A program made the position numbers and the translations under genes. The notes beneath the pieces are model-generated. The model made no database searches. It worked only from the letters and a program-made list of their open reading frames with translations, and had not been told where the DNA came from. Of a stretch of 64,000 nt of DNA, positions 35,534 through 43,400 are shown in pieces. Positions within the stretch are counted from its first letter, which is position 1, and each line of letters opens with the position of its first letter. Source of the stretch: Tetramitus jugosus (Eukaryota > Protista > Heterolobosea); assembly GCA_937625935.1 (NCBI GenBank), contig CALMHQ010000001.1, positions 1 to 64,000 of the forward strand. Reading direction: 5' to 3'.

Positions 35534-37377
35534 TCAATCGGCTCTCGCTCTACATAGCTATCACAGTTGTGAGGTTCGTGCTCAAGTGAATTGAATATAT
35601 GAAACACTTTATGTCACAATGGCTCTCGACTGGAGTAGGATTGGGTGAGCCACATTGTGACATAAAGTGTTTCATATATGGCATCTGCTCAAACACGAAC
35701 CTCACAACAGCAATGGCTATGTAGAGCGAGAGCCGATTGAAACTATGAAACTCAATATTTCGAGTGCAAAAGTTGTTAGTCGAGAGGTGGAGAGTGATGT
35801 AGTTAAAAGTCGTCTCACTATAATGAGTTTTGAATTATCAATCGGCTCTCGCTCTACATAGCTATCACAGTTGTGAGGTTCGTGCTCAAGTGAATTGAAT
35901 ATATGAAACACTTTATGTCACAATGGCTCTCGACTGGAGTAGGATTGGGTGAGCCACATTGTGACATAAAGTGTTTCATATATGGGATCTGCTCGAGCAC
36001 AAACATTATAACAGCAATAGATATACAGAGCGAGAGCCGATTGAAACTTTGAAACTCAATATTTCGCGCACAAAAGTTGCGATGGAGGGTTGGGTGGTGA
36101 TCGGCAACAGAAAAAGTGCCACAAATATAGTAATAAAACAGTTTCCCTGAAAAACTACAGCTATCAAATAAGTATATTGTATGTATGAAGTTTCAATGGA
36201 GACCAGTAACAATACTCCTATAAATACTCCGAACTCCGACACTTCTAAAGGAAGCATAGTAGAGAGAAAGCGAGTTGGGAGTAGCAAGCAATATAATAGA
36301 CAAATGATTAGCGTGAGCGGAGTAACCAAATTCAACTGTGATGGACAGAGTCGGATGACTTTCTGGGCGTCGGTCGGAGTTAAATATGACCATCATAGTT
36401 GAATATTATTAATCCGCTAGTGCTGATGATTTGATCTTAATATCTTATACAACTTCCATCTTTACTTTTTCTCTAAAATGCTCCGTTTCAATGTCGGAGA
36501 AATTAACTCTCTGAAAGAATAATAAAACAGTTTCCCTGAAAAACTACAGCTATCAAATATTTATATATTACGCATACAATTTCAATGGAAAACTTCGACT
36601 ATGCCCCTATTAATACTCCGAACTCCGACAAATGTAAAGGAAGCATAATAGAGAAAAAGTAAAGATGGAAGTTGTAAGCAATATAGTGAAGAGAGGAATA
36701 GCACAAGCGAATTGACTGTACGAAACTAAAAAATGTGAAATTTAGAGAGTGAAATTTGGAGTGAGTTGGTCTGTCGACGAACATTCGTGTGATTTGTTTC
36801 GAAAACACCTATTTTCTAAACGGTGCATTGCTTTGGTCTAATTCTCGTGTTGTTTCATAGCTTCATAATATTGTCTCTGTGGCCCAAGAGTCAGTCAAAT
36901 TAGACTGGCAGATTTCTTGTCGAAAAAAAAAAGTCCATGGAAAAGCATCGGAGAAATGATATTTATGGTGAATTAGAACAGAAAATTAATATTTTCTAGG
37001 TATTATGGACATAGATTATTAATCCGACATGCCGTTTTTGAGAAAAAAAGGATTGCTCCTCAGGGGAGTTTTTCCGACCCCTAGTGATGATACAAAAACG
37101 TAAAATTTTATGTTGAAATATATTTCATCGGTAGACGATTTACAATTGGAGATAGTGATTTTTTGATTTTTTCCGAAAAATTCCAAAAAAGTACAGATGA
37201 AACTCCGATGCAGCTAAATGTGTGAACATAGAGTGACACAGGATTTTTCGATTTTTGATTTTTGGCCAGATTATGTAGGGTGTCATAGCAACCAGTTTCA
37301 CCCTGGATGTGCACATATATATATATAGCCGTGACTGGGACCGTCTCCCAGCCCCCCACGCAAAATACGGTTTTTTG
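35534..37377 (+). repeat. 1.84-kb upstream block directly repeated at 41891-43734 (offset 6,357 bp); mirrored on the - strand
   Basis: Near-identical sequence from H1 through GCAAAATACGGTTTTTTG; the ORF track repeats at the same offset (36006 vs 42363). Confidence 0.95.
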
Positions 37378-37467
37378 TGTGGTGTGGGTTTTGTCCGGTC
37401 TTTTTTGGCCCTTTTCTGGCCAAAATAGGGGGGGGATCCCCTTTTCAAAAAATTTTTGCCAGTGCAA

Positions 37468-37825
37468 AAGTAGGTAGAAGGTACCTGGAAGGTACCTAGA
37501 GCTAGGTAGAAAGGAGCTAGGTAAAGGAGGTAGAAGGAGGTAAGAAGGTAGGCCGAAAGGAGCTAGGTAGAAAGTAGGCCGAAAGTAGGCCGAAAGTAGG
37601 TAGAAGGTGCCTAGAAGGTACCTAGAGCTAGGTAGAAAGTAGGCCGAAAGGAGGTAGAAGGAGGTAAGAAGGTAGGCCGAAAGGAGCTAGGTAGAAAGTA
37701 GGCCGAAAGTAGGCCGAAAGTAGGTAGAAGGTGCCTAGAAGGTACCTAGAGCTAGGTAGAAAGTAGGCCGAAAGGAGGTAGAAGGAGGTAAGAAGGTAGG
37801 CCGAAAGGAGCTAGGTAGAAAGGAG
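37468..37825 (+). repeat. Purine-rich ~124-bp tandem repeat (~2.7 copies) upstream of the mini-unit promoter block (mirror 30416-30773)
   Basis: AGGTACCTAGAGCTAGGTAGAAAG recurs at about 37490, 37616 and 37740; built of TAGGCCGAAAG and TAGGTAGAA words. Confidence 0.88.
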
Positions 37826-37949
37826 GCGCGTAGTATAGAATCTAGTATTCTTAATATGAAGCTTATTGCGTCCTGGTGACGTAGTAGGAATAGTGCTTAT
37901 GGGGCTCATGCTTCAGTACAAGCGCACCAACAACTCGCGTTCCGAACAG
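37812..37949 (+). promoter_or_regulatory. Duplicate promoter block not followed by rRNA (mini-unit, +)
   Basis: Matches 2067-2204 (GCGCG vs GCGTG is the only difference seen) up to GCGTTCCGAACAG, then diverges completely. Confidence 0.6.
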
Positions 37950-40075: not shown

Positions 40076-40119
40076 TTGCTCCTAGAAAAAACTCAGTCAG
40101 TTTATGTCTTATAGATGAA

Positions 40120-40482
40120 TCGCTTGCACTGCTGTTTAATTAACAATGTTGTGTTCCATGCGTCATATTAGATTGGAGCAATCACGCCTCCATCTCACAC
40201 TTGACCTCGATCTCGACTTTGGCCTAAGAGGAAAAGTGACCCTCCTGTGTTTCATAAAGACGAACCGTGTGAGCTTCTTGTTTATTCAATAGTGTTGTAT
40301 GTTACTGGTTTAATTGGATTGGCCAAATGACGACCTTCGGGTCACACTCGATCTCGACTTTGGCCACAACTTCGCGTTCGACGTGACCACTTGTGTTTAA
40401 TAGAGACTAACCGCTTGTGCTGTTTGTTTATCTGATAGTGTTATATGTTACTCGTTTCTTTGGATTGTATCAGATATGCTCC
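40120..40482 (+). repeat. Three degenerate ~145-bp homologues of the 625-bp repeat subunit (mirror ~27760-28121)
   Basis: e.g. CTTGTTTATTCAATAGTGTTGTATGTT near 40277, identical to the post-LSU repeat core; the array ends ATATGCTC as the 625-bp arrays do. Confidence 0.85.
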
Positions 40483-43400
40483 CCTAACAAAATTTCTAAT
40501 TTTCCGACACTAAAAAACGGCGCATTATCAAATGATTCTGCTAAAACTGCAACATATCAATATTTAATTTTGATTCTTCTCCACATAAAATTATCCCGCT
40601 ATCTTGCTCCCCTGAGAGTTTCTATTTTCCCGACTTTTATCCACGCATAATTTTATTACTCCGCTTGCGTTGAATATATATATATATGTATACAGTAAAT
40701 AATATCACAAGATAATTTCTCCGCATGCTCAGGGAAGGAGCTAAATTTTTCGGAGAAATATACGACGGGGTTATTGGGAACCTGACTGATGACATAGAGA
40801 GGAAATATAGATTATATAAAATGGTGCATGACAGAACCGGGCTAACTTGCTTCCTCTCCATTTTAGCTGTCAATAATTTTTTCGTGTTTTTGGGCTCCTG
40901 GAAAACATGAAATTTTGGCTACTTTGCGAGGAAGCATAGAATCGCCAAAGCGAAAAAACTGACGATATATATGTTCATATTCAAGGAAAAAAAAATACCC
41001 ATTTTTTGACGATTTTATTGATTTACGAAAAAATTCGCTACTTTGAGCGTGGTCGACCTTTTTTTGCTAAAAAAACATGTCTCTACTTCATCTGGTGACC
41101 AAATGGCCTTAAGTACGAACAGTAACTATAACATTTTAACATCGTTATATTTTTCGGTTAGGCTTAAATCCCCGCCAGTAAAAAGTTCCTTATGTTTTTT
41201 AAAATCGTAGGGGGGGGTTTACCGAAAATCACTTTTTGGGTGTTTTTGATTTTCTCGCGCTAATGATTTGCTCACTATATTGCATACTACCTCCATGCAT
41301 ACTTTTTTTTCATTATGCTTCCTTTAGAAGTGTCGGAGTTCGGAGTATTAATAGGGGCATTATTACTGGTATCCATTGGAAGTACATACATACAATATAT
41401 ATATTTGATATCTGTAGTTTTTCAGGGAAACTGTTTTATCATTCTTTCAGAGACTTACTTTTTCTGCCAGCAACAGAGAGAGAGTGATATGAGAAGACAC
41501 AGATGACGCAGTGAAGAAATCACGAGCACGAGAGAATCAGCCAAACGAAGCTGTGGGAGACAGGCCACACACCTAGATCTGACTGCAGCTATCTCCCACA
41601 GTTGAATTTGATTACTCCACTATCGAACATGATTTCTTCTCTAGATCTTATACGACTTCCATGTTTACTTTTTCTTCATTATGCTTCCTTTAGAAGTGTC
41701 GGAGTTCGGAGTATTAATAGGGGCATAGTCAAAGTTCTCCATTGAAACTACATACATACAATATACTTATTTGATAGCTGTAGTTTTTCAGGGAAACTGT
41801 TTTATTACTATATTTGTGGCACGTTTCTGTTGCCGACCACATTCCACCCTCCATCCAACTTTTGCACTCGAAATATTGAGTTTCAAAGTGTCAATCGGCT
41901 CTCGCTCTACATAACTATCACAGTTGTGAGGTTCGTGCTCAAGTGAATTGAATATATGAAACACTTTATGTCACAATGGCTCTCGACTGGAGTAGGATTG
42001 GGTGAGCCACATTGTGACATAAAGTGTTTCATATATGGCATCTGCTCAAACACGAACCTCACAACAGCAATGGCTATGTAGAGCGAGAGCCGATTGAAAC
42101 TATGAAACTCAATATTTCGAGTGCAAAAGTTGTTAGTCGAGAGGTGGAGAGTGATGTAGTTAAAAGTCGTCTCACTATAATGAGTTTTGAATTATCAATC
42201 GGCTCTCGCTCTACATAGCTATCACAGTTGTGAGGTTCGTGCTCAAGTGAATTGAATATATGAAACACTTTATGTCACAATGGCTCTCGACTGGAGTAGG
42301 ATTGGGTGAGCCACATTGTGACATAAAGTGTTTCATATATGGGATCTGCTCGAGCACAAACATTATAACAGCAATAGATATACAGAGCGAGAGCCGATTG
42401 AAACTTTGAAACTCAATATTTCGCGCACAAAAGTTGCGATGGAGGGTTGGGTGGTGATCGGCAACAGAAAAAGTGCCACAAATATAGTAATAAAACAGTT
42501 TCCCTGAAAAACTACAGCTATCAAATAAGTATATTGTATGTATGAAGTTTCAATGGAGACCAGTAACAATACTCCTATAAATACTCCGAACTCCGACACT
42601 TCTAAAGGAAGCATAGTAGAGAGAAAGCGAGTTGGGAGTAGCAAGCAATATAATAGACAAATGATTAGCGTGAGCGGAGTAACCAAATTCAACTGTGATG
42701 GACAGAGTCGGATGACTTTCTGGGCGTCGGTCGGAGTTAAATATGACCATCATAGTTGAATATTATTAATCCGCTAGTGCTGATGATTTGATCTTAATAT
42801 CTTATACAACTTCCATCTTTACTTTTTCTCTAAAATGCTCCGTTTCAATGTCGGAGAAATTAACTCTCTGAAAGAATAATAAAACAGTTTCCCTGAAAAA
42901 CTACAGCTATCAAATATTTATATATTACGCATACAATTTCAATGGAAAACTTCGACTATGCCCCTATTAATACTCCGAACTCCGACAAATGTAAAGGAAG
43001 CATAATAGAGAAAAAGTAAAGATGGAAGTTGTAAGCAATATAGTGAAGAGAGGAATAGCACAAGCGAATTGACTGTACGAAACTAAAAAATGTGAAATTT
43101 AGAGAGTGAAATTTGGAGTGAGTTGGTCTGTCGACGAACATTCGTGTGATTTGTTTCGAAAACACCTATTTTCTAAACGGTGCATTGCTTTGGTCTAATT
43201 CTCGTGTTGTTTCATAGCTTCATAATATTGTCTCTGTGGCCCAAGAGTCAGTCAAATTAGACTGGCAGATTTCTTGTCGAAAAAAAAAAGTCCATGGAAA
43301 AGCATCGGAGAAATGATATTTATGGTGAATTAGAACAGAAAATTAATATTTTCTAGGTATTATGGACATAGATTATTAATCCGACATGCCGTTTTTGAGA

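What the first reader, a model, noticed from the sequence alone, without database searches (positions are those of the whole stretch)
35534..41890. A 6,357-bp 'mini-unit' with the full rDNA control skeleton but a non-rRNA payload
Seen: in order, it has the same 1.84-kb upstream block as the rRNA unit, its own purine-rich repeats, the 138-bp promoter-proximal block (one difference seen), ~2.2 kb of unrelated sequence (37950-40120), three degenerate copies of the post-LSU repeat subunit, and a tail (~41595-41830) nearly identical to the rDNA tail arm (~12465-12700). A mirror copy lies at ~26350-32400. Known: spacer promoters in Xenopus, Drosophila, mouse and Arabidopsis IGS duplicate the Pol I promoter and yield non-coding RNA. 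Inference: this is more than a spacer promoter; it looks like a whole paralogous Pol I transcription unit or satellite replicon in which the rRNA genes were replaced. The promoter block is conserved while its flanking repeats have diverged, which suggests selection or ongoing conversion.
Basis: partly seen in the sequence, partly recalled or inferred. Interest (0 to 1): 0.88.

Follow-up and report, generated by a model that had tools for sequence, protein, structure and literature searches.

The report
Second, transcribed promoter-terminator unit in rDNA
The ribosomal-DNA element of the soil amoeba Tetramitus jugosus carries, ahead of each rRNA gene, a second copy of the gene's start and stop signals around about 1.8 kb of unrelated DNA that shows up as RNA in soil samples: an unusually complete version of the 'spacer promoter' known from animals and plants.

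Summary
Observation confirmed. The window is the unplaced rDNA contig of Tetramitus jugosus CCAP 1588/3C, a 42-45-kb repeat with two inverted arms. Each arm is mini-unit (M) then rRNA unit (R). M shares with R a 1.85-kb upstream block, a promoter-like block and post-LSU repeat subunits. New evidence: (1) M recurs in wild strains; a 119-bp core is unchanged in M and R of two strains, while the payload differs by 3.6% and the tail by 7%. (2) Six soil metatranscriptomes hold the payload; in the three laid, contigs thin out or stop in M's tail, whereas a DNA run is flat; inferred 3' end about 39,700-39,750. Strand, start site and polymerase are not shown. (3) The payload has no rRNA, Rfam or protein homology and no significant conserved fold; chromosomal hits are episome-derived fragments. 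(4) M is never seen without R: no support for a satellite replicon. Best reading: a spacer promoter plus terminator duplication making a ~1.9-kb non-coding RNA, insulated from the rRNA promoter. Known kind, new variant; I found no report in Heterolobosea. The scan noted the same unit on another piece of this genome (s1-550921), not in another organism.

The parts
35534..37382 (+). Upstream block U shared with the rRNA unit (two ~275-bp fold-back elements, two 130-bp modules, AT-rich stretch)
   Evidence: 99.9% to 41891-43738; module map
37467..37827 (+). M-specific purine-rich repeats (124-bp period x2.9)
   Evidence: 1/172 substitutions between strains
37831..37949 (+). Invariant 119-bp promoter-like core, identical in M and R of both strains (similarity extends left to ~37777)
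   Evidence: promoter function inferred from position 158 bp ahead of the SSU gene in R
37950..38097 (+). M-specific leader, 148 bp (R has 158 bp of 5'ETS at this place); no RNA contig laid here
38098..38420 (+). 43-bp minisatellite, ~7 copies, copy number differs between assemblies
38655..39338 (+). 392-bp-period tandem duplication (292-bp copies) with hairpins; homogenised within a strain, fastest-changing part between strains
37950..39750 (+). Payload found in RNA runs: putative ~1.9-kb non-coding transcript (strand and 5' end inferred)
39745..39750 (+). Only T-run of 5 or more in 37950-40500; candidate release site at the inferred main 3' end
   Evidence: inference
39865..40075 (+). Two weak, older copies of the post-LSU subunit (the ~125-bp duplication)
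   Evidence: 1 of 300 shuffles each
40099..40483 (+). Three degenerate copies of the 147-bp post-LSU subunit; candidate terminator array
   Evidence: RNA contigs thin out or stop here
40484..41250 (+). M-specific AT-rich spacer, no counterpart in R
41263..41889 (+). Tail with two inverted 130-bp modules; last 300 bp 95.7% identical to the R tail
26350..32425 (-). Mirror copy of M on the other arm
   Evidence: 99.9%
32376..35473 (.). 146-bp array at the head-to-head axis; always lies upstream of M
41891..43738 (+). U block of the rRNA unit, directly after M's tail
44233..44351 (+). R copy of the invariant 119-bp core
44510..50905 (+). SSU, 5.8S and LSU rRNA genes
   Evidence: Rfam
51172..53629 (+). 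625-bp post-LSU repeats built of ~147-bp subunits, preceded by T-runs at 51123-51165

Best explanation
M is a large spacer-promoter unit on the extrachromosomal palindromic rDNA. An old tandem duplication copied the control frame of the rDNA unit (upstream block, promoter, post-LSU terminator repeats, junction tail). Pol I loads on the duplicated 119-bp core, transcribes ~1.9 kb of non-coding, repeat-rich DNA in the rRNA direction, and stops mainly near the T-run at 39745-39750, with the degenerate post-LSU subunits as roadblock and fail-safe, ~4.4 kb before the rRNA promoter, which is thus spared read-through. What is selected is mostly the act of loading and transcribing (Pol I recruitment, open chromatin over the copied upstream block) rather than the RNA sequence. 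Recombination between the two U and core copies keeps them alike. Shown: anatomy, fixed order, conservation pattern, payload in RNA runs. Inferred: start site, strand, polymerase, terminator function, purpose, extrachromosomal circular form.
For: Order of homologous parts matches R. Core 0/119 changes in M and in R between strains, with the same two boundaries in both strains; chance of 0/119 at the payload rate 0.013, at the tail rate 0.0002. Six metatranscriptomes hold 0.27-0.31 of the words, as expected (0.26-0.32) for full cover by a strain 3.6-4.2% apart. X16 has contigs over the payload to 39719 and at 39929-40269, none over 40377-41186; X15 contigs have depth 186-318 on single-copy payload, 32 at 40033-40298, 3-4.5 on the tail; DNA run X6 is 82-200 over both. 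Payload composition equals that of the rRNA genes on the + strand (GC skew +0.15 vs +0.14/+0.16; tail -0.05). Payload changes far more than 5'ETS+ITS (52/1450 vs 1/529, p 2e-6), no RNA family, no ORF family, no two-sided covariation. Promoter plus terminator duplication is an established rDNA design (PMC12326227).
Against: No RNA contig lies on 37950-38081, so the link from the core to the payload is not seen in RNA; in X15 and X16 the core contig runs on into the rRNA 5'ETS. The tool says a hole proves nothing and that contig depth cannot rank parts of a gene; X15 and X18 also have contigs on the tail. No strand. Payload outside the duplication is clearly more conserved than the tail (2.1% vs 7.1%, p 3e-9), which a pure by-product would not need. 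The core could be invariant through conversion from R alone. Known spacer RNAs are at or below 1e-4 of pre-rRNA, yet this one assembles from soil metatranscriptomes.
Confidence: 0.55

Rival explanations
1. M is a dedicated Pol I gene for a functional ~1.9-kb non-coding RNA (nucleolar scaffold or regulator), built by reusing the rDNA frame and kept at one copy per rRNA unit.
For: Discrete unit with own terminator-like array; RNA seen in six soil runs; payload without the duplication 2.1% vs tail 7.1%; rRNA-like base skew; kept in at least three haplotypes although 1.85-kb direct repeats could excise it; folding z down to -2.7 (+) and -4.8 (-) at 38605-38829.
Against: Indels and 9-10% change in the hairpin region; array length varies; structure conservation not significant (12 of 100 null sets as good); 0 of 84 pairs with two-sided change; most windows fold no better than shuffles; payload ~19-fold more variable than ETS and ITS.
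Confidence: 0.22
2. M is a separate 6,357-bp satellite circle that shares origin and promoter with the rDNA, joined to it only by the assembler or by occasional recombination.
For: Flanked by 1,849-bp direct repeats at 99.9%, so pop-out would give a 6,357-bp circle; no raw long read could be examined; metagenome contigs of M end inside repeats.
Against: 5 of 5 M tails lead through U into R, none into another M; every M follows the 146-bp array; U is far shorter than a HiFi read; in DNA run X6 the shared core bin (258) is about twice single-copy payload and tail bins (104-134), a hint of 1:1 (depth is no copy number).
Confidence: 0.08
3. M is a functionless relic of an rDNA duplication whose rRNA genes were lost; the promoter leaks and is kept intact only by gene conversion from R.
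For: U and core are near-identical within a strain, as conversion would make them; payload is built partly of local repeats; degenerate terminator subunits (69-85%).
Against: No rRNA remnant; conversion would have to stop at the same two bases in two strains while M's own purine repeats are better conserved (0.6%) than R's (10-14%); a relic between direct repeats should be lost easily, yet all strains seen keep it.
Confidence: 0.12
4. The payload is a captured chromosomal or protein-coding sequence expressed from the episome.
For: Payload pieces occur on chromosomes 26 and 32; a 116-130-aa frame lies on the minus strand.
Against: Pieces are 143-510 bp, like the pieces of SSU, core, U and 625-bp repeat found on other chromosomes; the chr32 piece sides with this strain's alleles 24:1, so it left the episome after the strains split; the frame is 116 aa vs 95 aa in the second strain, with no Pfam or chromosomal match.
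Confidence: 0.03

Closest known systems
Pol I spacer promoters with upstream terminators (mouse/human Spacer Promoter-Tsp-enhancer repeats-T0; Xenopus; Drosophila), PMC12326227, PMC6562748
   Same: Promoter duplication upstream of and co-directional with the rRNA gene, followed by short repeats, with the post-rRNA termination element reused upstream; yields non-coding RNA that stops before the gene promoter.
   Different: Here 1.85 kb of upstream DNA and the junction tail are copied too; spacing is 6.4 kb; the transcribed part is ~1.9 kb of mostly unique sequence that seems to be read to its end (mouse Pol I is arrested right at Tsp); termination is ~4.4 kb before the gene promoter; RNA is detectable in soil metatranscriptomes; it lies on an apparent episome in Discoba.
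Naegleria CERE (closed circular extrachromosomal rDNA element), PMC5805870, PMC7714845, PMC11075319
   Same: Heterolobosean rDNA with no full rRNA genes on chromosomes, repeat-rich spacer; N. fowleri has a 2,135-bp direct repeat in its spacer.
   Different: CERE has one cistron in 12-16 kb and rRNA is its only documented transcript; this element has two inverted arms, 42-45 kb, each with a second promoter-like block and a spacer region found in RNA. Whether the N. fowleri repeat includes the promoter was not tested.
Entamoeba histolytica palindromic rDNA circle (EhR1/EhR2), PMC3294279
   Same: Two inverted rDNA units on an episome; two promoters in tandem (P1, P2); loss of a unit by recombination is reported (title of a reference cited there).
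   Different: P1 reads through into the rRNA genes and gives a longer pre-rRNA; here the upstream unit appears to end at its own terminator. Unrelated lineage.
Linear palindromic rDNA of Tetrahymena, Physarum, Dictyostelium; Didymium upstream promoter region (PMC13182076)
   Same: Head-to-head units around a central region; fold-back elements nested in direct repeats upstream of the promoter.
   Different: No telomere repeat in either contig here, both head-to-head and tail-to-tail junctions; no second transcribed unit described in that paper.

Membership tests
rDNA spacer promoter | Sequence duplication of the gene-proximal promoter region in the intergenic spacer, same orientation | tested here: met
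   119-bp core identical, 158 bp ahead of SSU in R and 6,402 bp upstream in M
rDNA spacer promoter | The duplicated block contains the real rRNA transcription start site | not testable with these tools
   Only contigs available; no 5' ends
rDNA spacer promoter | RNA is made downstream of the duplicate | tested here: inconclusive
   Payload in six RNA runs, and in three laid runs enriched over or present without its tail, but no contig on 37950-38081 and no strand
rDNA spacer promoter | Transcribed by Pol I | not testable with these tools
   Needs inhibitor or ChIP data
rDNA spacer promoter | Termination before the gene promoter at a copy of the post-rRNA terminator | tested here: inconclusive
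   Post-LSU subunits are copied and RNA contigs thin out at 39720-40300; terminator function of the subunits is not shown
Heterolobosean extrachromosomal rDNA (CERE type) | No complete rRNA genes on chromosomes | tested here: met
   Full SSU only on unplaced C53 and C55; chromosomes hold 30-221-bp pieces
Heterolobosean extrachromosomal rDNA (CERE type) | Closed circular topology | not testable with these tools
   Unit repeats in the contig and there is no telomere repeat; topology itself not seen
Heterolobosean extrachromosomal rDNA (CERE type) | Single cistron per element | tested here: not met
   Two inverted cistrons per 42-45-kb repeat in the assembly
Autonomous satellite replicon | Exists apart from the rDNA molecule (M-to-M junctions, free copy number) | tested here: not met
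   0 M-to-M and 5 M-to-R junctions in the assembly; raw reads not examined, so a minor species is not excluded
Known structured RNA families (Rfam 15), rRNA remnant, 5S | Match to a family model or to the organism's own rRNA | tested here: not met
   No hit in the payload at E<=5; no rRNA similarity; 5S is chromosomal, 47 matches
Conserved structured non-coding RNA | Base pairs kept by two-sided changes | tested here: inconclusive
   0 of 84 pairs two-sided; 12 of 100 null sets as good; only two haplotypes

The most novel reading that the evidence does not exclude
A eukaryote has turned a copy of the whole rDNA control frame into a second Pol I gene whose ~1.9-kb non-coding RNA has its own function, held at one copy per rRNA unit on the amplified rDNA element.
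Probability: 0.22. Interest if true: 0.8.

Novelty: new variant of a known kind. Interest (0 to 1): 0.55.

Why it matters
Nothing is mapped for rRNA promoters or terminators on heterolobosean rDNA elements in the papers I could read, and rRNA is the only documented transcript of the Naegleria element. The duplication acts as a natural footprint: it delimits a 119-bp candidate Pol I promoter and a 147-bp candidate terminator subunit, ready to test. If confirmed, it extends the spacer promoter-terminator design from animals and plants to Discoba, which bears on why such duplications keep arising. It also offers a compact, high-copy natural cassette in which Pol I transcribes non-rRNA sequence. 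The fast-evolving payload and tail (4-10% between strains with 99.9% identical rRNA genes) are a strain marker for Tetramitus in soil data.

Tried and rejected
Payload as eroded rRNA: blastn, nhmmer and Smith-Waterman give nothing above shuffles. Known RNA families: only sub-threshold miRNA-model hits on the fold-back elements; no tRNA. Protein payload: no Pfam match above cut-off, no chromosomal relative, frame length differs between strains. Plasmid and viral collections: no match. Conserved RNA fold in the duplication: several changes keep pairs through G-U, but the test was not significant and some changes look like copying between nearby repeats; a first script timed out and a pair count had a length slip and was replaced. 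Bacterial promoter and terminator scan: chance level, not applicable. L032 is a chance bacterial match to the 20-mer. Distant relatives of M in other Tetramitus species were not reached: the one metagenome scan found only near strains. Clark and Cross 1987/1988 could not be read, so any earlier restriction map of Tetramitus rDNA is unchecked.
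Full report
Source. The assembly has 26,350,207 bases and a 49,460-bp contig, which match Tetramitus jugosus CCAP 1588/3C (PMC11106597). The window is the first 64 kb of unplaced contig C53 (103,801 bp). 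The text I read of the genome note does not discuss the rDNA. Full SSU genes occur only on C53 and C55; chromosomes hold short pieces, as expected for the extrachromosomal rDNA of heteroloboseans (PMC5805870). 5S genes are chromosomal.

Architecture. Marker mapping gives a 42-45-kb repeat: tail-to-tail joint, rRNA unit R (minus), mini-unit M (minus), 146-bp array, M (plus), R (plus). There is no telomere repeat. A circle with two long inverted arms is the simplest reading, but topology was not seen. M occurs five times in full, with a 100% identical payload. All five M tails lead through the upstream block U into R and none into another M; every M follows the 146-bp array.

Observation. Confirmed part by part. 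Refinements: the promoter-side match reaches left to about 37777; three post-LSU subunits are clear (40099-40483) and two more are weak (39865-40075), so the unrelated part is about 1.8-1.9 kb; the shared tail is a member of the module family found at all junctions; 40484-41250 is unique to M.

The payload. It consists of a 148-bp leader, a 43-bp minisatellite, unique DNA and a 392-bp-period duplication. It shows no similarity to the organism's rRNA precursor, no Rfam match, no Pfam match above cut-off and no chromosomal protein relative, and nothing in plasmid or viral collections. Most 150-nt windows fold no better than shuffles; 38605-38829 reaches z -2 to -5. Chromosomal matches (chr26, chr32) are short, like those of every other part of the element. 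The chr32 piece carries this strain's allele at 24 of 25 informative sites, so it came from the episome, not the reverse.

Other strains. One metagenome scan with a 20-mer of the shared block returned M (L028, L031) and R (L029, L030) of a second strain, both units in the same assembly RCUH01. Substitutions against CCAP: 119-bp core 37831-37949 0/119 in M and in R; 5'ETS 0/158; SSU and LSU 0.1%; ITS1 0.4%; M leader 2.0%, array 1.9%, unique parts 1.0-4.3%, duplication 9-10%, subunits 7.0%, tail 7%; R 3'ETS 10.7%; R purine tract 10-14% but M purine tract 0.6%. The M/R shared core has the same two boundaries in both strains. The payload is thus intermediate: better conserved than its tail (3.6% vs 7.1%, p 6e-5; 2.1% without the duplication, p 3e-9) but far less than ETS and ITS (1/529, p 2e-6). 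The two copies of the duplication are alike within a strain (8/288, 1/288) and differ between strains (21-22 of about 282), i.e. concerted evolution. Structure conservation there is not significant (12 of 100 null sets; 0 of 84 pairs with two-sided change). Fourteen DNA or unlabelled runs hold 0.82-0.98 of the words, among them soil, rhizosphere, freshwater and insect metagenomes (some are likely the source culture), so M is not an assembly artefact or a culture oddity.

RNA. Six soil metatranscriptomes hold 0.27-0.31 of the words, the share expected if a strain about 4% apart covers the whole payload. Three were laid on 37812-41860 with one DNA run; all are contigs, so no strand, start or end can be read, and the tool warns that depth is one figure per contig. 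By position: X16 has contigs on the payload up to 39719 and at 39929-40269, and none on 40377-41186. X15 and X18 have contigs on payload and tail, so some DNA or read-through is present. As a hint only: X15 contigs break locally and read 186-318 on single-copy payload, 507 on the collapsed duplication, 32 at 40033-40298 and 3-4.5 on the tail; X16 reads 42-67, 92, then 2-4; the DNA run reads 82-200 over payload and tail alike. Treating two long contigs as mixtures of a high and a low part puts the drop at about 39700 (X15) and 39670-39745 (X18), and X16 ends at 39719 (a model). The only T-run of five or more in the region is at 39745-39750, and R has T-runs just before its first subunit. The payload's composition on the plus strand matches that of the rRNA genes, and the tail's does not. 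Gap: no RNA contig lies on 37950-38081, and the core contig continues into the rRNA 5'ETS. Graph cleaning of a low-depth link between two high-depth nodes could cause this (my inference; X18 lacks even the core), but a start or processing site near 38090 would too. The six runs may come from one or two experiments.

Mechanism. Most likely (0.55) M is a spacer-promoter unit: Pol I starts in the copied core, reads about 1.9 kb and stops at copied post-LSU elements well before the rRNA promoter; transcription itself is the selected trait. A functional RNA (0.22), a conversion-maintained relic (0.12), a free satellite circle (0.08) and captured coding DNA (0.03) follow. In the DNA run the shared core bin is about twice the single-copy bins, a hint of one M per R.

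Comparison. Duplication of promoter and termination sites upstream of the rRNA gene is described for human, mouse, Xenopus and Drosophila (PMC12326227), so having a terminator copy does not by itself make M more than a spacer promoter. Differences: the size of the copied frame, a long and apparently fully read payload, and a level that assembles from soil, whereas mammalian spacer RNAs are at most 1e-4 of pre-rRNA. For Naegleria, rRNA is the only documented transcript of the element (PMC11075319); N. fowleri has a 2,135-bp spacer repeat of untested content (PMC7714845). Entamoeba has two tandem promoters on a palindromic circle, but both feed the pre-rRNA (PMC3294279). Paper searches found no description of the Tetramitus element; the library lacks most subscription papers, including Clark and Cross 1988.

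Verdict. Real, conserved in wild strains and probably transcribed. It works like a spacer promoter with its own terminator; membership is met on sequence and open on start site and polymerase. New variant of a known kind, interest 0.55; 0.8 if the RNA proves to have a function of its own. Earlier scan notes describe the same unit in this genome (s1-550921) and predict a satellite circle (s1-557235); they are not independent support, and the circle found none here.

Noticed in passing
window 1-64000; G000 C53 and C55: The rDNA repeat is 42-45 kb with two inverted arms (M+R), a 146-bp array (about 21 or 14 copies) at the head-to-head axis and one 146-bp unit at the tail-to-tail joint; no telomere repeat. 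Orientation of the two axes varies along the contig: flip-flop isomers or an assembler's walk.
   Followed up: partly
window 35516-36079, 41873-42436, 54800-55500: ~275-bp fold-back elements (304-bp period) sit at every junction between units; candidates for recombination, cruciform or origin sites.
   Followed up: no
window 51172-53629 and equivalents: The number of 625-bp post-LSU repeats differs between arms (about 3 to 7), while the repeat is 99.3% identical in a second strain; the 3'ETS just before it differs by 10.7%.
   Followed up: partly
G000 C2, C5, C6, C11, C12, C18, C19, C21, C26, C29, C32, C33, C34, C35, C46: Short (30-510 bp) pieces of all parts of the rDNA element lie on many chromosomes at 70-100% identity, like organelle-derived insertions.
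   Followed up: partly
L025 5184-5410 (chr26 ~362184-362408): The chromosomal piece of the payload hairpin lies about 20 bp after a tRNA-Val gene.
   Followed up: no
window 39893-40017: One wild strain (run X18) lacks one copy of the ~125-bp duplication (skip of 123 bp); the chr32 piece has a similar deletion.
   Followed up: partly
L028-L031 (RCUH01, RCUJ01, RCUT01): Public metagenome assemblies hold both units of a second Tetramitus strain with rRNA genes 99.9% identical but spacers 7-14% apart.
   Followed up: yes
G000 C54 and C56: Both are 49,460 bp and identical over the first 10 kb: the mitochondrial genome is filed twice.
   Followed up: no
window ~8450-9050: The first rDNA copy of the contig has a lower-identity stretch at the LSU end (98.2%), probably a consensus error near the contig start.
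   Followed up: no
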